Below the pieces are notes generated by a model. That model was not told where the DNA came from and searched no databases. It worked only from the letters and a program-made list of their open reading frames with translations. The position numbers and the translations under genes are program-made. A stretch of 64,000 nt of DNA from Stegostoma tigrinum (taxonomy: Eukaryota): positions 2,780,689 through 2,844,688 of the forward strand of contig NC_081369.1 in NCBI RefSeq assembly GCF_030684315.1, written 5' to 3'. Numbering within the stretch: position 1 is the first letter of the stretch; each line of letters opens with the position of its first letter. Shown here in pieces: positions 671 to 58,459 of this stretch.

Positions 671-900
671 TGCCACCAACTCCACATCTGCCCGATCAGT
701 TCCTCACTCTCCTCTGCACAACAGGGGAAATTCATGTAGTTTGGTATACATCTGAGATCAACGCAACAGAAGTGTGGAAAGAGGGGAGTTTGTTTAAAGT
801 TCCCAGTGTTCTCAATCGTGTGGAGAGCGGATCGGCTTTCCGTGCTAGATTTTCCACACAACACTCAAGCCCCCAGCTAGTGTCAGTTACACGATTCAAG
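671..900 (+). pseudogene. Degenerate C1-set exon of receptor pseudogene A (paralogue of gene 1 exon 3)
   Basis: Reads PPTP-HLPDQFLTLLCTT-GEIHVVWY...KEGSLFKVPSVL, then after a frameshift C*IFHTTLKPPASVSYTIQ. This matches gene 1 C1 (PPTP..TLLCAT..EINITWY..KEGLYQISSYL..CEISHVSLYVPANDSY). The acceptor is TA instead of AG, the donor is G|at, the GFFP segment is deleted, and there is an in-frame TAG. Confidence 0.85.
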
Positions 901-2309
901 ATGAGAAATGTGAGCCTTTATTACTGTTTCTCAGACCCTAGTGTTGTGCGACATCCCGTGACCTATTTGATTCATTTTTAAAGTGTGATAGTGAAAAGCG
1001 CCACTGTCTGTAGCTTTTGCTTTCTTTTTGGCGAGGAACCTGACAACATGGCGTGATGTAAATTTGGTGGTACAACTTAGAATGCGGACTATAAATTTCG
1101 TAGCTAATCCATTTCATTCTCATGGCCTGAATTATTGACGATAGACCAGTGACATTGTGCATTTATTAGACATCACTTCATTTCACAGCATCCATGGACT
1201 TTCTACATCAAGATTTTTGCATGGCTTCTAATGACAGATGCAGAAGTGCAGGTCAAAGAATTGTTGAGAATCAAATTAAAAAAGACTTTAGTTCGATTCA
1301 GATGTGATCTAAACTCGATTTACATTTGGGAGGTTGCATAAAGTTTGCTTTGGCAATGTAATCGAAATAAACAGGGCTCATGACAGGTATGTTGGGGTAT
1401 AAAATAAGCGTGAGTAATAGAGCAGAGAAACTGCTGTCATTACGTTCAGAAAACTAAACGCCTGAAATCACTGGTATGACAGTGTAACAAAATCTAAAAT
1501 ACTGGTTGACTAATAGAGCCAAATCAATAAAACAAAATGGCTTTAATTAACCTGTCATTAGTAAGTGTCGTCTTGATTCTGTAACCCAGTCCTGGGCACT
1601 TGGTGAGAAAAATCTGAAGAATGTCCATCGGTTACTATACGTTTAAAAGAAAATTTCCAAAGTTATTGTGATTTCAGCATTTAAAATGGATAAACGTCAG
1701 AAGGTATTAATTACACAATGAAGGGGCCAGACTGTGTACATGTAGGTTTTATTTATCATCCCATTCCTTTTATTAAAGTCAATTGACTTTTTCCTGTATA
1801 GTTGTGGTTAATTTTTGAGCCACAATACAATAGTTGGCCGGTGTGCAAAAGCCTACCTAGATCCTCAAAGGAGGTGGGCTCTACCTGCTGCGTGTGTTGG
1901 TCACTGTTTTCAAAACGATCTAATTCTCAGCTGTTTCTATTATTTTTGTCTAATTACTTTTCTGTAATTTACACAGAGCTATTTAATTAAATTTAATAGA
2001 CACAATGATACTTAGAGATATGACACACAAATAAACAAACTTGCAGCAATATAGTCACATACATACTCTGAACTTGATTAACATTTGAAAATTATTCAGA
2101 ATTGATAGTCACGTTATATGTTATCATCTGTCACATTTTGTCAGGCTCAACTTTATCCCGAATAATGAATCAGGTGGAGCGTGCGTTGTACCCTCCATGA
2201 GAGACGATGTCCAAGTTATCGTCCTGGCTTTTTATGGTAAATTTGCTTTATTATTTATAACAGTCTTCTCTGCTGAATGGAAACATTCAACTTCTCCTGC
2301 ACCTTCCAG

Positions 2310-17468: not shown

Positions 17469-17520
17469 ATGGGAGTGCTGAATATCCTGTGCTCTATCTC
17501 AACCCTCGGCATTTACGCAG
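17469..17520 (+). CDS. Gene 1 exon 1: leader peptide MGVLNILCSISTLGIYA
   Basis: ATG in good context (aaaATGG), hydrophobic peptide, phase-1 donor G|gtattt, 183 nt upstream of the V exon and in frame with it. Homologous leader exons occur at 51214-51268 (-) and 61461-61515 (+). Confidence 0.85.
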
Positions 17521-17703
17521 GTATTTCGACTTACAGAGGTCGAATAAATATTAAGGGGCATTGGGATTGTGTACACATTACTTCTGTTCAATGCGCGTGT
17601 TGCTTTTTTTAAACAATCTTTTTTAACCGTTATATTCTTTAACACATTGTTCACTCACTAACAGCCTTACGAATCATTGTCTGTTTGTGCTTATTTCTCA
17701 CAG

Positions 17704-18024
17704 TAGCTGATGGGAGCTCTCTCCGGATGGTTCAGTCCCCCATCCGTTTGACGGCGGTGAAAGGTACAAATGTGTCCATGAATTGCTCTTACACACTTTT
17801 CGATCCTAAAGCAATCCTGGATGTTTCCTGGTCGAGACGAAACCAGAACAGGTCATTCGAAGTGACAGCAGACAACAGGGAAGTAGTGATATATTCGAAG
17901 CCATCAGCGGCCGAGTTACACCTGCTGAATGTGGATTTTCAGGACACCGGAATCTATCAATGCAGCGCGAGAGACTGGAAACATAAAATTTCTTCTGGGA
18001 GTGGGACTGAACTTACTGTGCACG
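17704..18024 (+). CDS. Gene 1 exon 2: Ig V-set domain with germline-joined J-like motif
   Basis: Acceptor tttctcacag|, donor G|gtgagt, 321 nt, phase 1-1. Reads MVQSP..VSMNC..VSWSR..LHLLNVDFQDTGIYQC..SGSGTELTV, with B-strand Cys, C-strand Trp, DxGxYxC and GxGTxLxV. Confidence 0.95.
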
Positions 18025-19469
18025 GTGAGTGATGTAAAGGGTATTCTGCAGGTGTATTTTCAACAAGCATGTTCAACAAGAGGGGCAGCGAAATATTGCT
18101 TCTGGGTTTCGAACTGTGCTTTTCATTTTCACCGCGTTGCTGCAATCGCTGTCTTTTCGCACAGGCGCGTTGTTTAATGCCCGCAGAAATCAGCAAATAA
18201 GGTTTTAGACAATAATTAATGCCATTTCAGTATCAAGAACCGAAAGAACTGCGGATGTTGGAAATCAGACACAAAAGCAGAAAATTCAGCAGGTCTGGCA
18301 GCAAATGGGGAGAGGAATAGAAGTTATATGCTGAGACTCAGCTCCTGTTCCAGATTCTCCGGAATGCGGATTCAATTGCTCGTATTTAACCGGTCAAGCC
18401 CTTTCTGAATATTATATTTTTCAATGAGATCAGCTCTGATCGCTCCAACCTCCAAATAAAAGCGACGGAAAATACTCATCCCCTAAATACAGGACAATTC
18501 CGTAACAGCGGCGACAAACAGTTATTTTTCGTTGCTCATCCTCCCATTCAAATACAAACTCTTTTAAACATGGAGACCAAACTGACAGTTAGCATTGTCA
18601 GAGTGGTTTAACCGAAGCACTGTGAAATTGCCAAAAGGCTTATTTCTGACCTTGTAGTTCCTGTCCCCTTGCACGAAAAAATGTTCAGTTTTCCTTCTTA
18701 ATTGCCTATCTCTCCTGCATTCTGACCTTCCAAGCTTCTTGTAGGATAGTACACAAATGCCACTGAGCATCTAGACAAAGAGTTTTGCATATTTCAAAAA
18801 TATTCTGTTTAACTATTCATTTCCCAAAGTGCACAACATCATACTTTATAATTAATCCGCTAACCTCTTCCCTGTGTACAGCCTTGCTACGCATCTTGCT
18901 CACAGCTTTATTTTGTTAGTTTATTCTTTGGATGTGGACACCTATGGATATGTCAACATTTGTTGCCCACATTTATTTTTAATTTAACTGATTAACTCAT
19001 ACTGCACTTAATGGACCACCTTACTGTTGACAGGTACGATTAGTATTCTGGCTAGATTGGATAAATTAGGCAGAATTCTTCCTGAAGGAAAGCACTTGAG
19101 TCAGAATGGTTTTGACAACAATTGATGATAGTTGGCATTGACACAGTAATTGAGATTTGAATTCATTAAACATTGAAAGAATAATCAATGAAGAATTCAG
19201 TCGAAATTAGTAATAAAATAAATTTCTACCAATGCTAGGATTTGGATACACGTTCACAGGGCATTAATATGTGACTCTGGATTACTGAAAAGGTTAAATG
19301 AAGTACCCAGGGAGAGAGAAGACATGAAACCAAGGGGGAAAAAAACAGACAAAATGGAGATTAAGAAAGTGATAAGCACAGAATTCAAGTATAATAATCA
19401 ATCAGGGCCACGTTGCAAAAATAATATGAACAGATCAAATTCTTAAAGAGTCATGCCTTAAGGACTTAT

Positions 19470-20220
19470 TTCTTAATGGACATAGATTCACAATAAAGTG
19501 GATAAATGAGAAATGCACTAGATATCAAATGCATACTATATAGTTGGGATCACATGACTTGGTACAAATTGATGATGAATGCGAATTGAATATCCAGAGT
19601 GTTCAGTTTTTAGGAAGACAGATAGATAGGAAAATGAGGTTGTGTAACCTTGTTGGTTAAGGAGGGCAGTAACACAATACTGAGGCAGGATATTAGCTCA
19701 CATATTATAGAATCTATATAGATATAACTTCAAAAGACCCAGGGGCATAAAATGAGAGTGGGGTATGTTCAAAGATCACCAATGTGCTAGCATAATATTA
19801 GGGAAAGCATTTGACAGGAAATTAGAAATGCAAAAGTTATAATGGCATTTGTAATTAAGGTGGCATTAATCTGCACATAGGTTGCGTAGTGCAAGTCAAT
19901 AATAATATCATAGAGGCAAAATTCCTGGCGTGCGTATGGCATGGTTTTCTGGATCAATGCATTGTAGAACCATTGCCAATACCATCCTCAACTGGGTAAT
20001 GAAAAGGGATAATAGGTAATTTGGCAGCGCAAGATCCCTTGGGGAAGAGTGACCATGGTATAACAAAATTGCTCATTAAGTTAGACAGTGACATTGTTGA
20101 CTCTGAGACTAGCGTCCTGAAATTAAATAAAGGAAAATGTGCAGCATGCGATGGCAATGATGAATTAGGGAGTGTTAATTAAAGAGATGGTTGTGTAAAA
20201 GTGAAGAGAAGCATGTAAAA
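19470..20220 (+). mobile_element. Old CR1 endonuclease-region fragment in intron 2
   Basis: Degenerate CR1 ORF2 N-terminal sequence, e.g. gatcccttggggaagagtgaccat (PLGKSDH). Confidence 0.6.
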
Positions 20221-22752
20221 AGTGGCTTTAAGAGATGTGTTTTATCTTGGTTTCTTCCAGAGAGGTGGGGTGAACAAGTGACGAGCAGTCTTTGAGAAGA
20301 TAAACAATCTGTGAAGTCTTTGGTGCCTTTAAAAAGAAACTGGAATCGTAGAAGCAGCCTGAAAAGATTTGGTCAAGTTCCAAACCACAAAACCAGGAAT
20401 TTTTAGTTCTTAATTTACAGCAGAAATTGCTGTTCAAGTCTTGAACAAGTGGAGGCTATTTTCCCTTGTCTCGATTTCAGACTAAAGCCCAAAGTTCTGA
20501 AAACTAATAACTAAAAATCCCTGGTTCTGTGGGTGGAAACTTGACCAAACTCATTCTGTCTGCTTCTATTGTTCCATGTTTTTTTTAAAAAACACCCAAT
20601 GTTTCACAAGTTATTTATCTTTTCATAGATTGTGGCACCTGTCTCCCAAAGTCTCTCTTTAAAAGAACCCAGGACAAAGGACACTTCTTAAAGCTTCATT
20701 GTCAAATTGGTAGCAGGAAACTGGCTTATTAGAGGATGGCAACAGAAATTGCTGGAAAAACTCAACAGATCTGGCAGCATTTGGGAGACAAAGCAGAATT
20801 AAAGTTTTAGGTTCAGTGATTCTTCTGAAGAATACTCTGAAGAAGTGCCACTGGATCTGAAACATTAATTCAGCTTTGTCTCCACATATGTGGCCAGACC
20901 TGCTGACATTTTACAGAAATTTATGTTTTTGTTTCTGATTTGTTCCAGGGTCTGCAGTTCTTTGATTCTTGAATACAGGATAGGTCTGGGTCATACTGTT
21001 TTTAGATACCAGCTGTTAAAGAACATTCACAAATGAATAAAACAAGTTACCAGCATTGCACTGCCAGTGCATTGCAACACTGGAGAATTTGGGCATCCCA
21101 GAAAGGCTGAGGACAGAATTATTCAGCCTAGGACTGGGAAGTAAGGCTGATACTATTACTCTGTTTGATGAATTCTATAGACTACTAACCAGGAAACAGA
21201 AAATCAGAGAACAAATTGAAAGCATAAATTATACAGAACTGCAAGAATTATGAGTTAGTTGTAAAGAGGCTGTTTAATTTTCCAAGCACAGACCAATATA
21301 TAAACAATGCTAAATGCAAGCGTTTGTGGAGAGTTTCAATATCAGTATATTTTCAGTCCAATAGGAAAGAGTCACTGTTGGATCCAGTGCTGAGAAATAA
21401 TTTGGCTCAATGGGATACACATCTACAGGGAGATAATTCGGACAAATATCTGTTATATTTGAAGATTTACATTGGCTCTGGGAATGTAAAAAACAAATTA
21501 CAAGTAAAAGTAAAGTTTCTTTTTATTTCATTTGTGTGATGTTGGGTGTTGCTGGCTGGCCAACATTTGTTGCCCATTCCTAGTTGCTGTTGAGAAGGTT
21601 GGAGTTGGAGAACAGCCAAATGCTGTACGAACCTAATGGGTCTGGGCAAGATAATTGGCATTGAACGTGGCCAGGCAAAACTGCAAATGAACAAGAAATG
21701 ACTTTTAAAAATGTAGAATTGTGTTTTATTATCACATGCACTCAAGGGATACAGGAGTGCAGTGAAAAGTTTACAATTCATGGTGCCATCTTGGGTACAA
21801 GGTACCTTGGTACAAAATCTTACATAAAGAGTAGAAAAATAAAGTTAAAAGTTCAACACCACTGTTCTTGTCAGTATAAAGTACTAAATAAGAAACAAAG
21901 TGAAAAGGTTCAAACTGCAGTCCTTCTCGAGCCATGGGCCTGCATAGGTTTTTACCATGAGCGCTCAGTATTTTTCACACACTTGGTTCAATCTTTCTCC
22001 CTGTGCTTGATCTCTCTCTGACACTGGGCTCAATCTGTCGATCCCCGAGCCTCAAGGCTGCCATCTCGTCATCGACCGCCTTTCACTGTCTCCTGCACTG
22101 GATGCAATCTCTTTACTTCTCAATTCCTGTGCTCCATAAACATACTTCAGGTAGAGTGAAGTTGCATTCCACAAATAGGTAAGGAAAAATAAAAGCTGGA
22201 ATTTCTTGCATAAAGGAAACCATAGAGGGTAATTTGAAGCTGAAAGGGTGTGACAATGCAATTGAGAATCCACCTGATTAGAAGAATCTCAGATATCAGA
22301 AATTTAAAAAAATCTGAGAAGCAAATAGAAAGTATCAGCAGAGGATAGCAGGTAACAGAGAAAATAATCCAAACAGGTTGTATGGGTACGTGAATTGGAA
22401 AATTCAGATAAAATGATGTTTGAAATTGCATAGAGGCTGAAAAGGGAAGACAGGCACAAAGACATTTTGAAAGTCAGAGGAGTTAATTGGATACATTGTA
22501 TCAGACTTTAATGACAAAGAAGATTCAGTCCAATTTGCAATTCCAGAGCAGAGAGTTTGGAAAATTGATTTAGAATTGCAGGAAAACAGATACCAGAACT
22601 GTTGGTTGTGTTTAAAATTAATAAATGTCCAAAAACAAATGAGGAGCTGTGTCACAACACCTAATTGTGAAACTTTGTAGATGACATTCTTTACTTTTGT
22701 AGTATAACATGTGAGGAACAATTTTAACAAGTTTCCATTAATTAAATCCCAG

Positions 22753-23028
22753 TGCCACCAACTCCTGTGAAGATTACTCATCAGTCCCATTCCACACTGC
22801 TCTGTGCAACAGCTGGCTTCTTTCCAAAGGAGATTAACATCACGTGGTATGAAAATTATACAGAAATTACAACTGAGTTCAACACAACTATAGAAAGGAA
22901 CAAAGAAGGATTATATCAAATTTCCAGTTACCTCAGCCCTGTGCAGAATGCAGTGATGTACACCTGTGAAATTTCTCATGTTTCTCTCTACGTGCCAGCC
23001 AATGACAGCTACATGTTTCTTGATCAGG
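22753..23028 (+). CDS. Gene 1 exon 3: Ig C1-set domain
   Basis: Acceptor tcccag|, donor G|gtaaga, 276 nt, phase 1-1. TLLCATAGFFPKEINITWY and YTCEISH are C1-set signatures (CxxxxF-F/Y-P..W and YxCxxxH). Confidence 0.95.
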
Positions 23029-23519
23029 GTAAGATTCTCAGCTTGACAATAATCATTTGAATGGGATGTGTGCTTGATATAGAGGACTGTCTTGTTTTAC
23101 TGGCCTGTAGCATATCATTCTTAATGAACTGAGTTTGAAAGACGCCACTGTGTTCATTGCAGTGCAAAGTACAATTCAGGTGGTACAGGACAATGTGGCA
23201 CTTTTGAGCTTCAGTTGAGTGTGGCTATCAAGCATATTGTCTGCTATGAATAGAGAATATTTCACTCTAATGTGAAGAAGGTTGTTCCCAAGTCCTGTGG
23301 TGATTTGTGGAGGTTTGATAGGAATTTTGGTGATTGGAAATTGAGTGCAGATCTCGAGGTTACAAAATACGTGTGTGCATAGAGAATGAGTCATCAGGTA
23401 ATGTACATGAACCCAAAAAACTGAAAGGTATTTTGTCAGAAAATCTAAACTGCAGCTTACTCTGGTGAAGTTTTAGTCAAAGTAGAGCTTAAATAAGCAA
23501 CATAGAGATAAATTAATCA

Positions 23520-23780
23520 AGAAGTGCAGAGAGCCACAGGGATCAGTGCTGGGGCTTCTGCTGTTCGTGACCTATGTAAATGATTTGGAGGAAAACATAG
23601 CTGATGTTATTAGTAGGCTTACAGATAAGACAATGATTGGTGGAGTTATGGATCGTGAGGAGGATTGTCAGAGGATACAGCAGGACACACATCAGTTGTA
23701 GGCATAATCAGAAAAATGGCAGATGGAGTTTAATCTGGTCAAATGTGAAACGATACATTTTGCAAGGTCAAGTTCATATG
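23520..23780 (+). mobile_element. CR1 RT fragment
   Basis: ccacagggatcagtgctgggg (PQGSVLG) and tggcagatggagtttaat (WQMEFN). Confidence 0.8.
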
Positions 23781-23784
23781 ATAA

Positions 23785-25690
23785 GATGTTAGGGCAGAAT
23801 TAACCCATTGAAGTCTCCTCTGCCATTTGATAATGGTTGATATGCTCCTTACTCCTATCTTCCTGTCTCCTTCCCATAGTCCTTCAACCCATCACCAATT
23901 AAGGACCTGTCTCACACCTCATTAAATTTACTCATTGTCCCAACATCCACTGCATTTTGGGGTTAAGAATTCCACGGATTCACAACCCTTTGGGAGAAGT
24001 AGTTCCTGCTCAATTCCATTTTAAATTTGCTACCCCTTATCCTAACACTGTGCCCTCTCATTCTAGAATGCCCCACAACAGGAAGCATCCACTCCATGTC
24101 CATTTTACCTATACCTTTTATCATTTTGAATACCTCAATTTGATCTCGCCACATTCTTCTAAATTCCAGAGAGTATAGGCCTGAACTGTTCAATCTTTCT
24201 TCATACAACAAACTCCTCACTCTGGAATCAATCTAGTGAACTTGCTCTGACCTGCCTCCAATGCTACTTCATCTTTCCTCAACTAAGGGGACCAAAATAG
24301 TGCACAATACTCCAGATGCAGTCTCACCAATACCTTGCACAGTTGCAAAAATACTTCCTTACTTTTATATTCTATTCCTTTAGCTATAAATGCCAAGATT
24401 CCATTCACTTTCCTTATTATCTGTTGTACTTTCATGCTAGTTTTCTGTGACACATAAACGAGGACTCCCAAATCCCTCTGCACCAGTGCATCTCAAAGTC
24501 CCTCCCCATTTAGATAATCATAGAATCAGAGAAACATAGACACACTACAGCGTGGAAACAGGCCATTCAGCCCAACAAGTCCACGCTGCCTCTCTCAACA
24601 GCATCTCACACAAACCCATTCCCCTACCCCTGCATTTCCTATGTCTAGCCTACCTAACCTAAACATCCCTAGGCACTATGGGCAATTTAGCATGGCCAAT
24701 CCACCTAACCTGCACATCTTTGGATTGTGGGAGGAAGCCGGAGCACTTGGAGAAACCCACGCAAGTATGGGGAGAATATGCAAACTTCACACAGGCAGTC
24801 GCCGAGGCTGGAATTGAACTCAGGTCACTGGTGCTGTGAGGCTGTAGTGTTAACCACTGAGCCACCATGCCGCCCAAAACAATAATACATTGCCTTCCCA
24901 TTTTTCTGACCAAAATACATGACCTCACACTTATCCATGTTAAATGCCATTTGCCACATTTTGGCCCACTCTCCGAATGTAAATATTTCAATTTTTAGGG
25001 TTCTTATTTCCTCATTGCTATTTACCGTTCCCCTGTACTTTTGTGCTGTCTGTAAATTTGGCTATAGAGCCTTCTATCCCTGTATCCCAGTTGTGAATGG
25101 AGATTGTAAATAGCTAAAGCCCAAAGGTTAAACCCTGTGGCAGCCCACTAATTACTTTTTGCCATCAAGAATAAAACCCATTTATCCCTACTCTCTGTCT
25201 TCTGTCCATCAGCCAGTCACCTATCCGAGCTAATAAATTTACCCCTAATCCCAAATGATCCAACCTTGTGAATTAACCTTTTGTGCGGCACCTTATCAAA
25301 AGCCTTCCAGAAGTCCAGATATACTAATATACAGGTTCCTCATTGTCCACTTTGCTTGTTCCATCTTTGAAGAACTCTAGCAAATTAGTCAAACATTATT
25401 TGCCCTTCCTAAAACCATGCTAAATCTGATAGATAACACTTTGACTTTCCAAATGTCCTGATATTGCTTCCTTGATATTGATTCTAACTTAGCCAGCAAC
25501 AGATGTTGAACTAACTATTCTGTAATTTCCCACATACTGCCTCCCTCACGCTTTGAATAGGGTGTTACATTAGCATTTTTCCAATCTACTGGAACCTTTC
25601 CTGTGTCCAGCGAATTTTGGAATATTGTAACCAATAGATTCACGATGTCCACTGATTCTTCCTTTAATACTCTACAATGTAGGCCATCAG
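23785..25690 (-). mobile_element. CR1 LINE (RT to 3' end), interrupted by a SINE
   Basis: QRDLGVLV, LVRLHLEYCALFWSP and FSQRVVNPWNS on the - strand. Confidence 0.9.
24520..24875 (-). mobile_element. HE1-type V-SINE nested in CR1
   Basis: rc begins gggcggcatggtggctcagtggttaacact (A box), followed by B-box-like agttcaattcc and V-domain ccacaatccaaagatgtgcaggttaggtggattggccatgctaaattgccc. Confidence 0.9.
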
Positions 25691-25699
25691 GCAGATTAA

Positions 25700-28320
25700 G
25701 TAAAAAACATTAGTTCTGTAACTAGAGAAGGTATTTCTGAAAAATTGTCCAATGAAAAATATGGGTTGAAATTGGAAATAAAAAGGGAATAATCAACTTG
25801 ATGGATTGTACTATAGACCTCCCAATAGTCAGAGGGAAATCACGGAACAAATATGTAGAGATACCTCGGGCATATGGAAAAATAATGAGGTTGTAATAGT
25901 AGGTGATTTTAATTTTCCAAATATTTACTGGGCCTCCCACAGTGCTAAAGGTTTGGATGGTGAAGAATTTATTACGTGTTGTCAAGAACGTTTTTTTTCA
26001 ATATGTAAATATTCTCACCAGAGAGGGAGCAAAACTAAATCTTCTCTTGGGTAATAAGACAGTTCAAGTGACTAAGTGACATTTGGGCAACATTTTGTGT
26101 CTAGTGATCATAGTTCTATTTGTTTAAAATAATCATAGAAAAAGGTAAGTCTTCTATAAAAACTAAAAGTTTTTATTTGGTGTAAGGCAAATTTTAATGG
26201 TATGAGAAAAGAACCCTCAAAATTGCTTGGAGTAGATTTCTTCCAGACAAGGGACAACTGATAAGTGGGAGGTTTTCCAAAATATCATGCGAGTTCAGAG
26301 TCATTGTATTGCTGTTAGAGTGAAAGCTAAAGCTGGTGGGATTAAGGAGCTATGGATGAACAAAGGTGTTGAAGTTCTAGTCAAAAATAAAAAATAATCA
26401 TTTATTAGGTATAAACAACTGGGTTCAAATGAATGTTTTGAACAGTTCAAAGAGTTGTAGGTGCAATTTTAACAAGGAGATCAGGAAGGTGAAGAAAGGA
26501 CATGAGTTAGCCTCAGCAAATAAGGCTAAGGATAATCCAAAGAGATTCTACAAGTACTTTACGAGAAAAAGAACAACTGCAGAGAGTGTAGGGCCTCTTA
26601 AAGATCAAAGAAATTGTCTTTATGTTTAACTTCAGAAGATGGGAGAAATATTAAATGAATATTTTGCATTAGTTTTTACTGCGGAGAAAGAAATGGAGGC
26701 TAGTGAACTCGAGGAAATAAAGACTGATGTTTTTAAAACAGTTCACTGACAGAATAAGAAGTATTAAAAATAAAAACAGGTGGATTAATCTCCGAGACAT
26801 GATCAAGCTTATCCCGGGACTTTGTGGGAAGTTAGGGAGGAAATTGCGGGAGCCTTCTCAGAAATATTTGTGTCATCTATGAATTCGAGTGGGTTCCAAA
26901 AGCCTGGACTATAGTTCACGTTGTATGTTTATCCAAGAAGGGATGTATGAAGAAGTTTGGGAACTATAGACCTGTGAGTCTAACTTCGGTGGAAAGTTGT
27001 TGGAAGTGATTCTGAATTATAGGATTTATACAAATTTTGCAGAGGCAAGGAATGATTAGGGATAGTCAGCATGCTTTTGTGGTGGACAAAGTGTCTCACA
27101 AACATAGTTGAGCTTTTTGAGGAAGTAATTGAGAAAATTGACGAGGGCAGATGGATAGACATTGTTTACTTGGACTTTAGTAAAGTCTTTGACAAGATTC
27201 CATATGTTAGACTAATCAGTAAAGTTAGATCACATGGATTCAAAGTGAACGTGCCAATTAGACAGAAAATTGCCTTAATAGCAGAAGATAGAGGGTGATG
27301 GTGGAGGATTGATTTTTGGACTGCAGGTCTGTTACCAGTAGTGTTCCACTGGGATCAGTGCTTCTGTTTGTTGTTTATATAAATTATTTAGATGAGAATA
27401 TCCAAAGCTTGGTGAGTAAATTGGCAGACGACACCAAGATTGGTAGTATACGGGATAGTGAGGAAGGTTACCTGAGGTTACAAAGAGATTTTGATCAGTT
27501 CAGTGAATGGGCTGATGAGTGGTAAATAGAAATAAATTTGGATAAATTGTAGGTATTACATTTCAGTAAAACAAACAAAGAGAAAACTGACACAATTAAA
27601 AGTAGGGCTCTGCACAGTGTTGTAGAACAGAAAGACCTAAGGATTCTGGCACATAACGCTGAAGTTTGCATCACATATAGAACCGGTGGTTTCGAAGGCA
27701 TTTTGTGCGCTTGCCTTTGTTGCTCAGACCATTGAGTATACGAGCTGGGACATTATATTTACATTGTACAGGATGTCACTGAGGTCTCTTTTGTGTCCAG
27801 TTCTGGTCTCCCTGTTATACGAAGGATATTATTAAACTGGAGAGTGTTCAGAAGGGATTTGCCACGATGTTGCCAAGAATGGAGAGTTTGAGTGATAAGG
27901 AGAGGCCAGATAGGCTGGCACATTTTTCACTGCAGTGTAGGAGGTTGAGAGGTGACTTTACAGAGGTTCATAAAATAATAAGGAGTATAAGTCAGCTGAA
28001 TAGCAAGCGTATTTCCCCTAGGCGGGGGTATTTCATTTCAAGAGAGGGGCTATAGTTTTAAGGTCGCAGGAGGGAGATTTTAAAAAGACATTAGGAACAA
28101 CTTTTTTTACACTGTGAGCAGTGTGTGGATTGAACTTCCTGAGGAAGTGGTGGATATGGGTACAGTTACAACGTTTAGAAGACATTTAGTTAATTACATG
28201 AACAACAAATGTTTGGAGGGGAATCAACCAAGTGCATGCAGGTGGAACTAGTTTGGAATTATGGTTGGCGTGGACTGCATGGACCGAAGGGCCTGTTTCC
28301 ATTTTGCATGAAGCTATAAC
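25700..28320 (+). mobile_element. Degenerate CR1 LINE (endonuclease-RT-3' end)
   Basis: YYRPPNS, VIVGDFNFPNI, YLDFSKVFDKIP and LADDTKIG. Confidence 0.92.
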
Positions 28321-29197
28321 CCTTTCGTAGTTGGTGTTCAATTTCATATATTTCCATCCACCCCAATGCCCTGTGTTAAAATGCTCAATGATTTTCATTT
28401 TGAATTATTCTGGCTGACCTGTAGTTACTGGACAGAAACCTCCGCACGTTGTAACCTCAGATTAATTATTAGGCAGCAACCTGCAGTGACAAGGAACAGA
28501 ATTGAAACCCATGTCATTCACACAATGACACCTGCCAACTTTCAGGGCCTTTGTGATGCATTCAATGCCGCTCACTATAATTTCACAGCCTGTGATTAAA
28601 TTCCATGTAATTTAGTGTCCACAGTAGGCAAACAGTCTTTCTGGTTGATTTAATGTTCTGCACAGAGGTACGAGAACAGGGAGCAGCATCTTACAGATAG
28701 AGAAAACCAGCAGGCATATGTGCACTTTCATGCTTCGAACAAAAAGAAAAAGACAGGGGAGACAATCTCACAGTGGCAATCTGAAAGGGTTCAGGGCCCA
28801 CTTTGACAGCTTTCAGAATTTAATGATCATGGATTTAAGAGGTATCTAATTGAAGTCTACATTCAGTAATGGTTATCACAAATCTCTTATTGATTGCCAT
28901 AAAATGGATATGATTCACAAATGCCCTTAAGAGAAGGAAATCAATCATCCTTCTCTGGTCTGGCCTACCAGGCCAACAGCAAGTGAATGACTCTGATCTG
29001 TTTCCAAGAGATACTGGAAATATGCAGCAATTGCTTAGTGTCCAATGATATCATCAACCCATGAGCAACTGAAATTAGAAGAAATCTGCATGTTTGAAAT
29101 ATGGCAACTAACAGAATTAAATGTTCATATTAACACAAATAGATCATTTTTGTGTTCTTAATTTCTTATTGGACTTTATTCATGCTTCTGCAATAAT

Positions 29198-29515
29198 TAG
29201 ATTAGATTCCCTACAGTGTGGAAACAGGCCCTTTGTCCCAACAAGTCCACACCGTCCCTTGCAGCATCCCACCCAGACCCATCCCCCTATAACCCACAAA
29301 CACCCCTGAACACTATGGGCAATTTAGCATGGCCAATCCACGTAGCCTGTACATCTTTGGACTGTGAGAGTAAACCGCAGCACCCGGAGAAAACCCACGC
29401 AGACACGGGGAGAATGTGCAATCTCTGCACAGGCAGTTACCTGAGGCTGGAATTGAACCCGGGTCCCTGGCGCTGTGAGGCTGCAGTGCTAACCACTGAG
29501 CCACCGTGTCACCCT
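29198..29515 (-). mobile_element. Full-length HE1-type V-SINE just upstream of the TM exon
   Basis: rc gggtgacacggtggctcagtggttagcactgcagcctcacagcgccagggacccgggttcaattcc...; the tail is (tagat)n on +. Confidence 0.92.
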
Positions 29516-29656
29516 AATGTTGCAAATTGGAAGGAAAGATAGAACTGCTGAATAGTCCCTGAGAGATGATTGCTTTAACATGTGTGTTACTTTTTGTCTG
29601 ACATTGGCTTCTTCTCTTTAACTGCTAACATTTGACTTGTTCTCCCCTTTCTTTAG

Positions 29657-29764
29657 CTACCAGTGACAGTATTTTGCAAAAAGTGGCTGGATGTGCTGTA
29701 GCAGGATTACTACTTCTAGTGTTGGTAATTGTTGTGATACTTTGCAAACTTAATACAATTAAAG
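29657..29764 (+). CDS. Gene 1 exon 4: stalk plus uncharged transmembrane helix
   Basis: Strong acceptor tctcccctttctttag|, donor G|gtaaga, 108 nt, phase 1-1. Reads ATSDSILQKVAGCAVAGLLLLVLVIVVILCKLNTIK. Too short for the ORF track. Confidence 0.9.
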
Positions 29765-30222
29765 GTAAGACTTGTCACAAACTATGTTCAGAATTGGTTT
29801 TGATTATTTAGTTACAACTCAATGCTGCGGTGTCAGGAAGATTGATTAGTCATGTCTGGGGCATAGGTTTCCATGCACTCCAGCTTTGGGATCTTCTTCC
29901 CTCTGAAATCCAGTAGTCTAATAATAGAAGGGGCTAAAACCCAACCTACCCCTCATGCTAATTTTTCTATTCTTGAAAATTAAGATGAACCATATTTCAT
30001 GCTTAATGGAAGGCAGTTATCAAAGTTCAGTGAATTGAAATCAGCTAATTCTGAATTATAAAACAAACTTATTCTCATTCTATAATAAAAGGGAATGCCA
30101 CTGTGTTAATTGTGATGTGATTGGCCATGTTACTTGATCACAGCATAACTTTAGACTGACATGATGCCAAATGGTGTTTATAAATGAAATTGATCATTGA
30201 TAAAAATGTTGTTCTCTAATAG

Positions 30223-30275
30223 GCACCAAGGTCACTTCAGTTAATTCCAAAGATAACAGCCAGTTCGAAGAACAG
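30223..30275 (+). CDS. Gene 1 exon 5: juxtamembrane cytoplasmic exon GTKVTSVNSKDNSQFEEQ
   Basis: Acceptor gttctctaatag|, donor CAG|gtttgt, 53 nt. Converts phase 1 to phase 0, as needed to join exons 4 and 6 in frame. Confidence 0.75.
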
Positions 30276-31010
30276 GTTTGTTTCTTGATCATGTTTGTTA
30301 TTTGAGAAATAGAAAGTTGTTACAGCATACAACACACATACATCATTATTTCCTGAACTGCTGTGACATCAGAGCACCTCATGCCAAGCTCATCCATTCC
30401 TAATGATGCATTTGCCCTAAATACATGGTTAATGATCACTCAATTCTGCGATGACACCCATACATAACTAAACCACCAGTTTCTGCAAACTATTTACATT
30501 GTGTCACTGTAGATTGGATAGTTATTCAAGTGTACAAAGTGGCATATCCTCACTCAAAATATAACAGAAAATGTTGGCATATTCAGCAGAACAGGCCAAA
30601 GCTGTGAAGAGAAACATCTAAAGTACCTGGTGTAAGACATTTGATCATTTTCCATTAATTCTGTTATCCGCTTGTATTGCCCACATGAAATTCTATATGA
30701 CATGCACGGATTGAAAGGGTGCTGTCATTATTCAAGTCCAGCCATAGTCTTTCTGTTCCATTGAATTCTAAAAACCGGGCATTTGTTTTGTTGTTCATCA
30801 TTCCATTTCTATGTCTCAGGCAAGTCAATTGTGAATGCATATTCACAGAAATGCTTATTCTCAATTTGTATGTATTGACAAGTGGTTTGAAAATTGCCTG
30901 CAGGACACATATGCCTGGAAGCACACTTTTCACTGTTGGGTGATAAGGTTTTAAGTGCAGGTAAATGGCATCTGGGTGACGAATTGCTCAAGTGAAAGCA
31001 ATTCTGATGC

Positions 31011-31148
31011 AAGATAACAAAGTGTGAAGCTGGATGAACAAAGCAGGCCAAGCAGCATCTCAGGAGCTGCTTGGCCTGCTGTGTTCATCCAGCTTCACAC
31101 TTTGTTATCTTGGATTCTCCAGCATCTGCAGTTCCCATTATCACTGAT
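31011..31148. mobile_element. Short Penelope-derived insertion with a fold-back inverted repeat and 15-bp TSD
   Basis: ~46-bp inverted arms with one mismatch. Direct repeat gcaattctgatgcaa at 30998-31012 and 31149-31163. Confidence 0.75.
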
Positions 31149-31371
31149 GCAATTCTGATGCAATTTTGGTTTACTACACTCAGGCAGGAGCTTGTTCTTA
31201 TCTTCCACGATCATAGAATTTGACTGAATCAAACAATAACAGTATAACCACAAGATCAATGCTGTTATCCTTTAAGCCTGATTTATCTCATGTATACTGT
31301 TAGCAATTTTTGATGCTGCACTGTACTTATAATTAAGACTCAGATGGTATTTCTATAATATTTATCTTCAG

Positions 31372-31482
31372 AGAATACAACAAGGAGAGATGAAGTTTCC
31401 ATCTTATGCTCTTCTAAACTTCAGAGAATACAAGAGAAGTAGAAAGCACAGAAATAAGGAAGACCAAACTTTGTATGCAATG
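31372..31482 (+). CDS. Gene 1 exon 6: cytoplasmic exon with ITIM-like YALLNF and ITSM TLYAM(I/V)
   Basis: Acceptor tttatcttcag|, 111 nt, phase 0-0. Reads RIQQGEMKFPSYALLNFREYKRSRKHRNKEDQTLYAM, donor |gtacga. Confidence 0.8.
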
Positions 31483-31622
31483 GTACGACTGTAAAACCAA
31501 ACAATGTTTTCTAACTAAGGCTGCTCCAACACAAGTGCCTATTCCCATTGATGTACATTGAATACCTACAAAAGTTAATTTGACAAACAGCTGCCCTTGA
31601 TATTTCCTTGTTACTTTTACAG

Positions 31623-31715
31623 ATTAAAGAAGAGACAGAAGTAAATCCGACTTACGAGTCTCTGGATATGACCAATTTGCCAAAACAACAACAAGGAAAT
31701 AGACTGAAAACGTGA
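31623..31715 (+). CDS. Gene 1 exon 7: terminal coding exon IKEETEVNPTYESLDMTNLPKQQQGNRLKT*
   Basis: Strong acceptor ttccttgttacttttacag|, phase 0, third Tyr motif (NPTYESL), TGA at 31713-31715. Total CDS is 1014 nt = 337 aa plus stop. Confidence 0.7.
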   Translation: MKEETEVNPTYESLDMTNLPKQQQGNRLKT

Positions 31716-33039
31716 AGATAAGCAAGTCCAACAGAGAATCCAGAATTGTATAAGAAAAATATCCAGTTTTACTGGGTCTAGCCATCTTCTTGAACAGATA
31801 TGATGTCTGCCTGATTGAATTGGACTTATTATAAACCATATTATTGCCTATCAGAAAGGGTGCAAAGAATCAAAGATGCAAAGACAGAAATACGTTCACT
31901 TCTGGGCCTCTGTACTCCTTGGATAAGCCATATCTGTAAAAGTAAGGATTCTATGTATTAATTAACATCAGTTATTATAGATATTAAAGACAGTAGATGT
32001 CCCTTTTGTGCCCACTAGTTGATCACATTGGAGAGTTAGATCATCCACCTGAATCCACACTAATGCATTGCAGCCTTGCATTGTACCTTCTGCACATAAG
32101 AATCAGACCACACGCTCAACTGTTCTCTCCTAGGCTTTCTACTCCACCGAATCTCCACCCAACCCTGATTAACCTGAACCCACCAATCTATCCTTCTGTA
32201 CATTTGTTCCTGATGTAGCTATCAAACTTCTCCTTCAGTTTCTTTGTGTTTATCACAGCTAAAAACCCTACCAATAGAAAATTGCATACACCAAACATTT
32301 GCTGTGTGAAGAGCTTCTTCACAATGTATCAAGTCATAAAAATATATTTCTGGATTATAGTTCTCATCACACTCTGAAGTCAAAGTACCATTTCCACACT
32401 TTTCTTTAAATAGTTTTCATCATTTAAAAGAAAACTGTCAGTTCACCTGAAGAAGGGTCCCAACCCGAAACTTCAAGCTTTCTTGCTCTTCTGATGCTGC
32501 TTGGCCTGCTGTGTTCATCCAGCTTCACACTGTGTTATGTCAGTTCATCCATTGGCTTTAAAACAAAACATTTACAGGAAGACAACAGTACCACTCAAAC
32601 CAAAATCAGGAATGTCTACCCGATTGACTTTTCCAGAATACATATAACGCAACTCTTTTAATTTCAAAATGTATCCATCATTTCTTTGCCTGTTCTCAAT
32701 GGTGGCATCTTCAAAAAGAGCTGAGGAGAGAAATCCAAATATGGACCAGACTTTGAGAAAGGTACATTCCTTTTCATCTCAGTCAGAATGTATTGGCTGT
32801 TTAGTCTGTGTCATGAATCTAGATACCACAGCTAGTGGCAAACTCCTATTACCATCTACTGATCAAAAAATTTAAACACTTTATGTTTCAATTAGACCAG
32901 CAGATGATTTTTTTTCTTTTCAAACTTGAAGCAAGATGGGCCTATTTCATCATTTTCACCATAACGAGTCAATAAAATGAAGTCCACTGCACTTCCTCCA
33001 GAACAATTATTTCTTCCTTCTGAAAGAAGACCAGATATC

Positions 33040-33975
33040 TGTGTACAAAAATTGAGGGATTGAGTTGATGCAATAAAATGAAGGATACAGACAAAAACAA
33101 AAAAAAACTTAAATATGTAAATAATCAAGAAAGACATACATAGTCTCGAAGAGTGGGCAAAGAAGTGGCAGATGGAATACAATTTTGGAAAATATGAGAC
33201 TATGCAGTCAGTTGGGAATAATACAGCCATTGGCTCTTTTCTAAATGTGGAATGTCATCAAAAATCCGGAGCACAATGGACTTATAAGCCCTAGTTCAGG
33301 ATCTTCTTAAAGTTAATATGCACATTCAGTTTGCAATTAAGAAGGTAAGTGAAATGTTAGCATTCATTTCAAGGAGGTGAGAATATAACAACAGGGATGT
33401 ATTGCTAAGGCTATGTAAGGATCTGGTTAGACTGCATTGGAATATTGTGAGCAGTCTTTGGGCCCATATCTAAAGAAAGATGTCCTAAAATTGGATTGGG
33501 AGGGAAGTACATAAAAAGCTCAAAATACTGATCTCAGGAATGAAGGGCATGTCATACAAGGAGTGGTTGAGGACTCAGGGTCTCAACTAGTTGGAGTTTA
33601 GAAAGATGAAGAGAATCTCATTGAAACTTACAGAATACTGAGATGCCTGGATCACGTGGATGTGGAAAAGGTGTTTCCACACATGGAAGGATGAGGATCC
33701 AAGGTCAAAACATTAGAATGAAGGGCAGACCCTTTAGAACTGAGATGGGGGGAAATTTCTTCAGTCAGAGGGTTGTGAATCTGTGGAATTCACTGCTACA
33801 GAAGGTAGTAGAGGCTAAGTCATTAAGTATATTTAAGACAAAGGTAAGTAGCTTCTTGATTCATGAGGAGATTAAGGCTTATGGCGAGAATGAATGAGAA
33901 ACCATGATCGAATGGTGGAGCAGACTCGCTGGGCTAAATGGCCTAATTCTCTCCAATATAGTATGGTCTTGTGGT
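33040..33975 (+). mobile_element. CR1 LINE 3' fragment
   Basis: WAKKWQMEYN-type sequence, RPFRTEMGGNFFSQRVVNLWNSL, and CR1 3' UTR aaatggcctaattct. Confidence 0.85.
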
Positions 33976-50045: not shown

Positions 50046-51213
50046 AAAAAATTAAAACATCAGTTGAGCATGGGGATTATACTTTCGATTGTCTTCAACA
50101 AACACTTGTTGATGGAAGCCACCATTAATGGGCTGCAACCGATGAAAGGCTCGGTTAAGCAAAATGTGCCTGTTCGATGTTTTAAAACTCCATGTGAGTC
50201 TTTCATTGTGATGGAAATATTCGGTTCTGTTTGTTCAATCATTAGAAATGTGTCGCTAGCACTTATTGCCCCTCCAATTCTACATTCATATAAACACTAA
50301 CTTAGACCAAGTGATGGCACTGCAATGCGTAATTAATTTGGACAAACACTACGATCATGACAGCAGAATAAAATCAAACATATTCCGTCCGGCTGGGGGG
50401 AATCTGTAGAAAACAATGCCTCCCAGGACAAACTGAATCAATATATTTCTGAGTTAAATACGCATTGTGATAGTAGTGCACGCTGTGTGTAAATAAAACA
50501 TTTGTTAAAATTAAACCAGCATAAGTAAAACAGCTAGTCGGTCAATGACCAGAACAACAATTGATCCAGTAATCTGTATTTTCGAAGATCAGTGGTCAAC
50601 ATTCCTGGTGTACGTAGTGAATTTCTGAAGCTCTATCCCAATTTTAGGCTGTGTTGAAAGAAAATGAGAAATTATTTTGGCTCTTCTCTCAGCCTCTGAC
50701 ATCGCTGAGGATTGATTTCTGAGTGCTTTATGTGTTGTTTCATTTCCTTTCCAGTTGCATTTCCGTCAGTTAAGAGTGAAAGGCACATTTTCAGTTCAAT
50801 TTCAAGGCCTTTTGGTCCAATCTCACATCATTTTCTGAGTTACTTAATCGTTTCTCTCGAGGCTTCTTCTGACTTGGTCTTGACTTTCATGTTTGACCTT
50901 AAAATGCTTGGCGAATCTGTGGCACAGCATTTTAACACAAAGAATTAAACGCACATTTTGCCAGCAGGTCTTTGAAAGAGCTCACACTGATTCTAACAAA
51001 CAGAATTTCGTGTTCTTTAATCGAAACTCTAACAAAGAGGCGAGTTGACAGCTTGCATTTTTTTTGTTCATTCACGGGATGTGGGTGTCGCTGACCAGGC
51101 CCAGCTGCACACCGTGTTATCTCAGATGCTCCAGCATCGGCAGTTCCCACTATCTCTGCAACAGTTGTTACTCACTTTGTGTCTTTTTATCCGACAGGTT
51201 TTGGTTTGTGTAC

Positions 51214-58260: not shown

Positions 58261-58459
58261 CGTTGCAGGTTGGCTGCTCCCCTGAACCAGAGTTAGGACG
58301 AAGCCAGCATTAAGATCCACTGGTCGCAAGGGTGCACAGCCAACCTGACGTCTTCCTTTCACCTCCAACACAGCACTCTCCTCCTCTCGGTCCACAAGAA
58401 GAGTGGGTCTTTATTTTATTCCAGATGTAAGCTGGTTCACTGTGCTTGAAGGTTTGTTC

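What the first reader, a model, noticed from the sequence alone, without database searches (positions are those of the whole stretch)
17469..31715. Complete shark V(J)-C1 inhibitory-type receptor gene with a SIRP-alpha-like architecture
Seen: seven exons with canonical GT-AG sites and compatible phases (1,1,1,1,0,0) give an uninterrupted 337-aa type I membrane protein: leader, V, C1, uncharged TM and a tail with three Tyr motifs. Five of the seven exons are invisible in the ORF track. Established: C1-set domains are largely restricted to Ig/TCR/MHC/beta2m, tapasin, SIRP and B7/butyrophilin-type proteins, and SIRPs combine a J-motif V domain with C1 domains and ITIMs. Inference: this is a SIRP-like, or independent non-rearranging antigen-receptor-like, inhibitory receptor in a cartilaginous fish, with one C1 rather than the two of mammalian SIRP-alpha. 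I cannot tell whether it is already described beyond automated annotation.
Basis: partly seen in the sequence, partly recalled or inferred. Interest (0 to 1): 0.88.

Follow-up and report, generated by a model that had tools for sequence, protein, structure and literature searches.

The report
Shark SIRP-like VJ-C1 receptor gene
This is a real, intact shark gene for a membrane receptor with one antibody-like variable domain, one constant domain and a tyrosine-motif signalling tail; it belongs to a large, uncharacterised receptor family found across sharks, rays and chimaeras that most resembles mammalian SIRP-alpha without clearly being a SIRP.

Summary
The seven-exon model is correct. All splice sites are AG/GT, the phases are 1,1,1,1,0,0, and the exons sum to 337 codons plus a stop. 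Each exon matches, in order and at the exon borders, a Hemiscyllium ocellatum RefSeq protein named [quoted passage not shown] (62-78% identity).

No RNA run was available, so splicing rests on homology alone.

The gene is one member of a family found across cartilaginous fishes (65 protein clusters, at least 14 species). NCBI names the members inconsistently, most often SIRP-alpha-like. The window holds four copies, and only this one is complete and intact. The scan's first-stage notes list at least six similar genes elsewhere in this genome.

Support for a SIRP relationship:
- The family tail aligns over all four tyrosine motifs with a lungfish SIRP-alpha-like tail (33 bits; best of 2,000 shuffles 13.9).
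- A C1 tree joins the family to coelacanth and lungfish SIRP C1 domains (91/78).

Evidence against SIRP membership:
- There is one C1 domain, not two.
- The ectodomain scores about equally against SIRP-alpha, Ig light chains and UrIg2.
- Synteny and CD47 binding were not tested.

In this copy two of the three tyrosine motifs have Pro at -2, which does not fit the ITIM consensus. Some relatives have an Arg-bearing membrane segment and a short tail, which points to a paired-receptor family.

The parts
17469..17520 (+). Exon 1: start codon and split leader (17 codons plus 1 base, phase 1)
   Evidence: Read. The donor GT follows 17520. There is a weak match of 17484-17519 to the leader of P0166. 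It resembles the family leader consensus in alignment A1.
17704..18024 (+). Exon 2: V-set domain with a J-like GSGTELTV motif in the same exon (germline-joined VJ)
   Evidence: Translation. Pfam V-set 7e-13. 64% identity to P0166 residues 18-124. AG/GT borders.
22753..23028 (+). Exon 3: the single C1-set domain
   Evidence: Translation. Pfam C1-set 2.6e-14. 77% identity to P0002 and 76% to P0166. It lies in the family clade with P0166 and P0002 at 100/99*.
29657..29764 (+). Exon 4: stalk and uncharged transmembrane segment
   Evidence: Translation. 78-85% identity to the TM segments of P0166 and P0002. Genomic contigs are identical here.
30223..30275 (+). Exon 5: first cytoplasmic exon (ends ...QFEEQ, phase 0)
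   Evidence: Translation. 76% identity to P0166 residues 255-271 and P0002 residues 180-196. The P0002 model then reads on into the equivalent of this intron.
31372..31482 (+). Exon 6: cytoplasmic exon with motifs PSYALL and TLYAM(I), whose tyrosines lie 23 residues apart
   Evidence: Translation. 72% identity to P0166 residues 272-307. Aligned to family tail motifs 1 and 2.
31623..31715 (+). Exon 7: last coding exon with motif (N)PTYESL and the stop codon TGA at 31713-31715
   Evidence: Translation. 62% identity to P0166 residues 309-329. Relative to the orthologue the frame changes near 31682. The ancestral C-terminus is still readable in another frame at 31716-31747, after the stop.

Best explanation
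This is an intact member of a multigene family of non-rearranging type I receptors found across cartilaginous fishes. Members have a split leader, one germline-joined VJ-type V domain, one C1 domain, a TM segment and a tyrosine-motif tail.

Shown:
- The gene structure, and homology of every exon to annotated family members.
- The family's spread across sharks, rays and chimaera.
- Its clustering in this window with decayed copies.
- The colinearity of the family tail (four Tyr motifs with conserved spacing) with a sarcopterygian SIRP-alpha-like tail.

Inferred mechanism:
- The V domain binds an unknown cell-surface or pathogen ligand.
- Src-family kinases phosphorylate the tail tyrosines.
- The first two motifs are 23 residues apart, against 24 in the SIRP-alpha peptide that engages the tandem SH2 domains of SHP-2. 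They would recruit SHP-1/SHP-2-type phosphatases and damp activation.
- Relatives with an Arg-bearing TM and a short tail would be the activating partners of a paired-receptor system.

In this copy the motifs are degenerate. Pro sits at -2 of motifs 1 and 3, the fourth motif is lost, and the C-terminus is frame-shifted relative to the orthologue. Its signalling may therefore be weakened, or may run through the ITSM-like TLYAMI motif. The family is related to SIRPs but is not shown to be orthologous to them.
For: - Gene model.
- Domains.
- Exon-by-exon colinear matches to Hemiscyllium protein P0166.
- Family breadth: 40 and 65 hits, all from cartilaginous fishes, with names and species.
- Four copies in the window.
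- Tail: an HMM of 21 family tails scores the lungfish SIRP-alpha-like tail P0101 at 33.0 bits over HMM positions 4-97, with all four tyrosines in register. Two thousand shuffles gave a mean of 0.45 and a maximum of 13.9.
- Human SIRP-alpha motifs ITYADL, TEYASI and LTYADL, and the peptide with 24-residue Tyr-Tyr spacing that engages SHP-2: PMC5413580 and PMC5589908.
- C1 tree: family clade 97/99*; family plus coelacanth and lungfish SIRP C1 domains 91/78, with the MHC-like, multi-C1 and teleost Ig-like domains outside.
- Family C1 HMM per-domain scores: SIRP-like 50-56 bits, MHC-like 39-45, shark multi-C1 29-44.
- The coelacanth reference is a true SIRP: 182.5 bits end to end against human SIRP-alpha.
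- Charged-TM, short-tailed relatives. One of them (P0171) has a C1 almost identical to that of the ITIM-bearing P0162 (100/100*).
Against: - No transcript evidence. No RNA run was found and the runs laid are genomic DNA.
- The ectodomain is not specifically SIRP-like. The family profile gives human SIRP-alpha V-d2 59.2 bits and d3 42.6, Ig lambda V-C 61.3 and UrIg2 V-C1 56.2.
- The V exon alone does not list SIRP among its best 60 PDB hits.
- The family V HMM gives only 24-29 bits to the best non-family V domains in the set, which include the SIRP V domains and multi-C1 proteins.
- The 91/78 node in the C1 tree is not strongly supported, and only 107 columns were used.
- Two of the three tail motifs of this gene fail the ITIM consensus.
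- Short tyrosine motifs can converge.
Confidence: 0.65

Rival explanations
1. The family is an independent antigen-receptor-like lineage. It could be a counterpart, in cartilaginous fishes, of the bony-vertebrate PRARP genes (VJ + one C1 + TM, with ITIM-bearing and charged-TM partners), or a separate relic of the antigen-receptor precursor. On this reading the SIRP-like tail arose by convergence or exon shuffling.
For: - The architecture has one C1 domain, as I recall for PRARPs (own knowledge of Fu et al. 2019, cited in PMC10751288), and not the two of SIRPs (PMC12975943).
- The ectodomain profile scores Ig lambda, UrIg2 and SIRP-alpha about equally.
- The family has a split leader and a single VJ exon, like antigen-receptor genes and UrIg2 (PMC12227049).
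- Some members have a charged TM.
Against: - All four tail motifs and their spacing line up with a lungfish SIRP-alpha-like tail, well above shuffles.
- The C1 tree and the HMM scores favour SIRP C1 domains over the other C1 domains available.
- No PRARP sequence could be obtained, so this rival was not tested directly.
Confidence: 0.22
2. The gene is a direct orthologue of tetrapod SIRP-alpha that lost, or never gained, the second C1 domain, and it binds a CD47 homologue.
For: - Tail colinearity.
- The C1 tree node at 91/78.
- NCBI's commonest name for family members.
- One relative (P0031) has V-C1-C1 through a recent duplication of its C1.
Against: - Coelacanth SIRP matches human SIRP-alpha at 182.5 bits end to end. 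The shark family profile reaches only 101 bits, below UrIg2 and an Ig chain.
- The family is large and diverse, not a single conserved gene.
- Synteny could not be examined.
Confidence: 0.1
3. This particular copy is silent or on its way to becoming a pseudogene. It is intact by reading frame but has decaying signalling motifs.
For: - Pro sits at -2 of motif 3, where 20 of 20 relatives have L, V, M or I.
- The fourth motif is absent.
- The frame changes near 31682 relative to the orthologue, and the old C-terminus is left untranslated.
- Two of the other three copies in the window are decayed.
- No RNA evidence exists.
Against: - All 337 codons are open and all twelve splice signals are canonical, despite 22-38% protein divergence from the orthologue.
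- The V and C1 hallmarks are intact.
- The orthologue also lacks the fourth tyrosine, so that loss is old and has been tolerated.
Confidence: 0.12

Closest known systems
SIRP-alpha / SIRP family (PTPNS1, SHPS-1, CD172a)
   Same: - Type I receptor with an N-terminal V domain that carries a J-like GxGTxLxV motif, followed by C1-set domain(s), an uncharged TM and a tail of alternating xxYAxL and xEYAxI-type motifs.
- The Tyr1-Tyr2 spacing is 23 residues, against 24 in human SIRP-alpha.
- The family tail is colinear with a lungfish SIRP-alpha-like tail.
- The C1 domain groups with sarcopterygian SIRP C1 domains.
- The family also contains charged-TM, short-tailed members, like SIRP-beta.
   Different: - One C1 domain instead of two.
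- The ectodomain is not closer to SIRP-alpha than to Ig light chains or UrIg2.
- The family is large and fast-diverging, not a small conserved set.
- Two motifs of this copy do not fit the ITIM consensus.
- The ligand and synteny are unknown.
[quoted passage not shown] 2019, cited in PMC10751288)
   Same: From my own knowledge of that paper: non-rearranging VJ + one C1 + TM genes, occurring as an ITIM-bearing form and a charged-TM form. That is the same domain count as here.
   Different: They are described in bony vertebrates. PRARPs are a linked pair of genes, not a large family.
UrIg / UrIg2 (non-rearranging shark antigen-receptor-like genes; PMC12227049)
   Same: - Split leader, single-exon VJ domain and C1-type constant domains in cartilaginous fishes.
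- UrIg2 is the top summed PDB hit of the C1 exon and of the family profile.
   Different: - UrIg2 has 9-11 C domains and no tyrosine-motif tail is described for it.
- Its per-domain scores are low, at 17-31 bits for single C domains.
- Shark multi-C1 proteins fall outside the family clade in the C1 tree.
Hemiscyllium ocellatum LOC product P0166 (RefSeq, 'tyrosine-protein phosphatase non-receptor type substrate 1-like isoform X1') and Chiloscyllium plagiosum P0002
   Same: They are probable orthologues. All exons are colinear at 62-78% identity (P0002: C1 77%, TM 85%), and they form a 100/99* clade with this gene in the C1 tree.
   Different: - P0166 has canonical ITIMs (LSYAAL, LIYVSL) and a longer C-terminus.
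- This gene has PSYALL and PTYESL and an earlier stop after a frame change.
- A second Hemiscyllium isoform (P0170) lacks the TM exon.

Membership tests
SIRP family | N-terminal V-set domain with a J-like motif encoded in the V exon | tested here: met
   Pfam V-set 7e-13. GSGTELTV lies at the end of the V exon and is followed directly by the donor site.
SIRP family | [quoted passage not shown] | tested here: not met
   There is one C1 exon (22753-23028). A tblastn of the C1 exon against the window finds no further C1 exon between the V and TM exons. The orthologue P0166 is colinear with no extra residues.
SIRP family | Sequence closer to SIRPs than to other V-C1 proteins | tested here: inconclusive
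   - Family profile against the PDB: SIRP-alpha V-d2 59.2 bits and d3 42.6; Ig lambda V-C 61.3; UrIg2 V-C1 56.2.
- Family C1 HMM: SIRP-like 50-56 bits against MHC-like 39-45.
- C1 tree: family plus sarcopterygian SIRPs at 91/78.
- The V domain is uninformative.
SIRP family | SIRP-alpha-type cytoplasmic tail (alternating ITIM-type motifs that recruit SHP-1/2) | tested here: inconclusive
   - The family tail HMM aligns all four motifs of the lungfish SIRP-alpha-like tail (33.0 bits; shuffle maximum 13.9).
- Tyr1-Tyr2 spacing is 23 residues against 24 in the human peptide.
- This gene has three motifs, two of them off-consensus.
- Phosphatase binding was not tested.
SIRP family | Binding of CD47 by the V domain | not testable with these tools
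   No ligand data are available. No complex prediction was attempted because no shark CD47 sequence was in hand.
SIRP family | Conserved synteny with the SIRP locus | not testable with these tools
ITIM-bearing inhibitory receptors | At least one (S/I/V/L)xYxx(I/V/L) motif in the tail | tested here: not met
   PSYALL and PTYESL have Pro at -2. TLYAMI has Thr at -2, which fits the ITSM consensus TxYxx(V/I). The orthologue and most relatives do have canonical ITIMs.
Ig C1-set domain | Match to the C1-set profile above the curated cut-off | tested here: met
   PF07654 scores 53.8 bits against a cut-off of 21, E 2.6e-14.
Rearranging antigen receptors (Ig/TCR) | V segment separated from the J segment, with recombination signals | tested here: not met
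   The J-like motif is contiguous with the V sequence in one exon, which ends at a GT donor. There is a single C1 domain, then a TM and a long tail.
UrIg / UrIg2 | VJ domain followed by several C domains (UrIg2: 9-11; PMC12227049) | tested here: not met
   There is one C1 exon only. Shark multi-C1 proteins fall outside the family clade.
PRARP | VJ + one C1 + TM, in ITIM-bearing and charged-TM forms; sequence similarity to PRARP-A/B | not tested
   The architecture agrees with my recollection of the paper.
Tapasin / TAPBPL and B7H6 (names NCBI gives some members) | Tapasin: a large N-terminal domain before V-C1. B7H6: V-C ligand without a J-like VJ | tested here: not met
   Only a 17-residue leader precedes the V domain. 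Neither tapasin, TAPBPR nor B7H6 appears among the best 60 PDB matches of the C1 exon or of the family profile.

The most novel reading that the evidence does not exclude
Cartilaginous fishes carry a large family of non-rearranging VJ-C1 receptors that turns over by birth and death. It is a paired family, with tyrosine-motif tails in some members and an Arg-bearing TM in others. It shares ancestry with SIRPs and keeps the minimal V-C1 antigen-receptor-like ectodomain. On this reading it is an innate, possibly polymorphic, recognition system comparable to teleost NITRs or mammalian KIR/LILR, and an extra data point on what the antigen-receptor precursor looked like.
Probability: 0.3. Interest if true: 0.7.

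Novelty: new variant of a known kind. Interest (0 to 1): 0.5.

Why it matters
Non-rearranging VJ-C1 genes are central to arguments about how immunoglobulins and T-cell receptors arose (PMC12227049, PMC10751288). SIRP-type paired receptors control phagocyte activity in mammals.

A family of single-C1, SIRP-tailed VJ receptors found across cartilaginous fishes, with putative activating partners, would push this receptor logic back to the oldest jawed vertebrates. It would also give a concrete set of genes to test for ligands, phosphatase recruitment and adaptor pairing.

Expectations should be tempered. The family is already in automated annotation, and this copy is one ordinary member with somewhat degenerate motifs.

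Tried and rejected
- **RNA evidence.** The look-up of sequencing runs with the V exon found no RNA run. The four runs of unknown kind turned out to be genomic DNA, with contigs colinear through the introns. The joints reported there are all in high-copy repeats, not at splice sites.
- **Bony-vertebrate relatives by word-indexed search.** The Heterodontus homologue, the 16-member family alignment, and the tail of the lungfish SIRP-like protein returned only cartilaginous-fish hits or the query itself. Tetrapod SIRP-alpha and PRARP full-length sequences could therefore not be added to the trees.
- **V-domain assignment.** The V exon against the PDB gives I-set adhesion molecules, scFv, TCR-alpha and NAR V at similar weak scores. 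The family V HMM gives 24-29 bits to the best non-family V domains in the set. This is uninformative.
- **UrIg2 as closest relative.** Its top PDB rank comes from summing three 17-bit domains, so I rejected it.
- **Alternative charged TM exon.** I looked for one inside this gene, using the C-termini of four charged-TM relatives as queries. Only chance-level hits appeared.
- **Literature.** I found no paper on shark SIRP-like genes in the held library. The UrIg (J Immunol 2023), Ohta 2019 and Fu 2019 papers are not held.
- **MHC linkage.** The scan's notes place all MHC findings on other pieces of the genome, which is uninformative.
- **Joined spliced protein.** All searches were exon by exon, so no full-length search, fold or complex prediction was made.
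Full report
**Observation**

I read the region directly and checked the borders by script. The exons are:
- Leader: 17469-17520
- V: 17704-18024
- C1: 22753-23028
- TM: 29657-29764
- Three cytoplasmic exons: 30223-30275, 31372-31482 and 31623-31715

All have AG acceptors and GT donors. The phases are 1,1,1,1,0,0. The exons sum to 1014 nt, that is 337 codons and a TGA stop.

The exon translations show:
- a V domain that ends in the J-like motif GSGTELTV
- a C1 domain with the usual Cys, Trp, and Y-x-C-x-V/I-x-H pattern
- an uncharged TM
- three tyrosine motifs

Pfam calls the V exon V-set (7e-13) and the C1 exon C1-set (2.6e-14, 53.8 bits against a cut-off of 21).

Everything below was done exon by exon, and the joined protein was not searched, folded or modelled.

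**Is the model more than a plausible reading?**

An exhaustive HMMER search with the C1 exon gave 723 hits at E up to 0.001. Among them were many 200-450-residue proteins with a single C1.

Fetching them showed full V-C1-TM-tail proteins from cartilaginous fishes. Each exon of the window gene, searched alone against all proteins fetched, hits consecutive segments of Hemiscyllium ocellatum RefSeq protein P0166:
- V: residues 18-124, 64% identity
- C1: residues 126-216, 76%
- TM: residues 227-253, 78%
- Tail exons: residues 255-271 (76%), 272-307 (72%) and 309-329 (62%)

The one-residue gaps fall where the split codons lie, and no unmatched residues sit between segments. Chiloscyllium protein P0002 is colinear through exons 3-5 and then reads into the intron.

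So the exon set is complete and homologous to annotated models.

**What is missing is RNA**

The run search with the V exon found no RNA run. The four runs it did find are genomic DNA. Their contigs run straight through the introns with zero differences over 29500-31033 and 31128-32476. The only joints are in high-copy repeats. Expression and splicing of this copy remain untested.

**What it belongs to**

Word-indexed searches with a Heterodontus homologue and with a 16-member alignment returned 40 and 65 protein clusters. All come from sharks, rays and chimaera: Callorhinchus, Heptranchias, Heterodontus, Hemiscyllium, Chiloscyllium, Scyliorhinus, Mustelus, Carcharodon, Cetorhinus, Mobula, Hemitrygon and Leucoraja.

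The names given by NCBI are inconsistent. Most are [quoted passage not shown] (SIRP-alpha-like). Others are tapasin-related, NCR3LG1-like, CD276, Ig lambda-like and MHC-like.

The window itself holds four copies:
- **Remnant at the window start (+).** A degenerate C1 lies at 673-905, a TM-like exon at 2309-2407 and a tail exon at 2938-2985.
- **The intact gene.**
- **Decayed copy on the minus strand.** Its C1 at 49565-49306 is broken into three frames. Its TM lies at 47867-47793 and its tail exons at 47255-46600. Its first motif has lost the tyrosine.
- **A fourth copy (+).** The V exon is at 61821-62132 and the C1 exon at 63256-63561. It runs off the window end.

The scan's own first-stage notes list at least six further leader/VJ/C1/TM/tail genes on other pieces of this genome. 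None has been followed up.

In a C1 tree the family is one clade (97/99*). The window gene is sister to the Hemiscyllium and Chiloscyllium proteins (100/99*). These are probably its orthologues in a related carpet-shark lineage.

**Is it a SIRP?**

Three lines of evidence point towards SIRP.

1. *The tail.* An HMM of 21 family tails aligns the tail of a lungfish SIRP-alpha-like protein (P0101) from position 4 to 97 of 105, with all four tyrosines in register. It scores 33.0 bits. Two thousand shuffles of that tail gave a mean of 0.45 and a maximum of 13.9.
   - The motifs alternate between xxYAxL and xEYAxI types, as in mammalian SIRP-alpha (ITYADL, TEYASI, LTYADL; PMC5413580).
   - The first two tyrosines are 23 residues apart here. 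They are 24 apart in the human SIRP-alpha peptide used to engage the tandem SH2 domains of SHP-2 (PMC5589908).
2. *C1 scores.* The family C1 HMM scores coelacanth and lungfish SIRP C1 domains at 50-56 bits. MHC-like C1 domains score 39-45 and shark multi-C1 proteins 29-44.
3. *The C1 tree.* It joins the family to the sarcopterygian SIRP C1 domains at 91/78, with the other C1 domains outside. The coelacanth reference is a true SIRP, at 182.5 bits end to end against human SIRP-alpha.

Several points count against membership.
- There is only one C1 domain, where SIRPs are defined by V plus two C1 (PMC12975943).
- The family profile scores human SIRP-alpha (V-d2 59.2 bits, d3 42.6) no better than Ig lambda V-C (61.3) or UrIg2 V-C1 (56.2).
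- The V domain is uninformative.
- The 91/78 node rests on 107 columns.
- Synteny and CD47 binding could not be examined.

I therefore file it as SIRP-related and SIRP-like in its working, but not as a demonstrated SIRP.

PRARPs (VJ + one C1, ITIM or charged TM; cited in PMC10751288) are an untested alternative. I could not obtain a PRARP sequence.

UrIg2 ranks first in the PDB only by summing three weak domains, and it has 9-11 C domains.

**How it probably works**

The family looks like a paired-receptor system.
- Most members have long tails with canonical ITIM-type motifs.
- Some members have short tails and a TM with an Arg near its start and ...IVDH at its end. These are P0038, P0171/P0172, P0190 and P0185.
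- One of these, P0171, has a C1 nearly identical to that of an ITIM-bearing protein of the same species, P0162 (100/100*).

By analogy with SIRP-alpha and SIRP-beta, the long-tailed forms would recruit SHP-type phosphatases after tyrosine phosphorylation. The Arg-TM forms would pair with ITAM adaptors. This is inference; nothing was tested biochemically.

- Motif 1 is PSYALL. Pro at -2 occurs in 3 of 20 relatives.
- Motif 3 is PTYESL. All 20 relatives have L, V, M or I at -2.
- Motif 2, TLYAM followed by I from the next exon, fits the ITSM consensus.
- The fourth motif is absent.

Relative to the Hemiscyllium orthologue the reading frame changes near 31682. The old C-terminus is still recognisable in another frame at 31716-31747, after the stop.

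The gene is open and well spliced on paper, so I think it is functional. Its signalling strength or polarity is uncertain, and a silent or decaying copy cannot be excluded.

**Novelty and verdict**

I found no paper on this family in the held library. Several key immunogenetics papers are not held, so this is not proof of absence.

The family is already in automated annotation, and the scan has met it repeatedly in this genome. The gene is a new member of an uncharacterised, single-C1 variant of the SIRP-type or VJ-C1 receptor kind. It is of moderate interest to comparative immunologists, mainly as part of the family and not as a single gene.

Noticed in passing
window 61821-62132 (V) and 63256-63561 (C1), + strand: A second apparently intact family member. 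Both exons have AG/GT borders and phase 1. The V domain lacks the G-x-G J-like motif and ends ...KPSAQLDVY. The C1 falls in the other family subclade (97/94*). The gene runs off the window end, and I found no convincing leader exon.
   Followed up: partly
window 49565-46600, - strand: A decayed family copy. The C1 is split over three frames (49565-49306). A TM-like exon with charged residues lies at 47867-47793. Tail exons lie at 47255-47142, 46993-46844 (the first motif tyrosine is replaced, ...SNAALSF) and 46728-46600 (which keeps MEYAKIKLNKP). No V exon was found. The LINE at about 53-58.5 kb lies where one would be expected.
   Followed up: partly
window 673-905, 2309-2407 and 2938-2985, + strand: Remnant of another family copy whose 5' part lies before the window. 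It has a shortened, degenerate C1, a TM-like exon and a first tail exon (GTEITEDVPDQLEPQV).
   Followed up: partly
window 30974-31241, 32448-32581 and about 33118-33251: Very high-copy repeats, with summed contig word depth in the millions or tens of thousands, inside intron 5 and the 3' flank. The one at about 31010-31125 is a near-perfect hairpin. Similar sequence occurs at about 62850-62960 and about 51045-51130. All joints seen in the laid contigs come from these repeats.
   Followed up: no
proteins P0038, P0171/P0172, P0190, P0185 (Chiloscyllium, Heptranchias, Scyliorhinus, Heterodontus): Family members with a short C-terminus and a TM carrying an Arg near its start and ...IVDH at its end. 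These are putative activating partners. P0171 has a C1 almost identical to that of the ITIM-bearing P0162.
   Followed up: partly
proteins P0166 / P0170 (Hemiscyllium ocellatum): RefSeq isoform X2 of the orthologue skips the TM exon in frame. Both neighbouring introns are phase 1, as they are here. This predicts a membrane-less form that keeps the tail, and the same skip would stay in frame in the window gene.
   Followed up: no
proteins P0001, P0003, P0005-P0007, P0009, P0013 (white shark, bichir, frogs, sevengill shark): Long uncharacterised proteins with 7-16 C1-type domains were the highest summed hits of the C1 exon. They fall outside the family in the C1 tree. Some may be UrIg2-like.
   Followed up: partly
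window about 53100-58500, GC 0.56-0.60: A GC-rich LINE on the minus strand, with reverse-transcriptase, endonuclease and zinc-knuckle ORFs. Another first-stage note calls it a Tx1 LINE.
   Followed up: no
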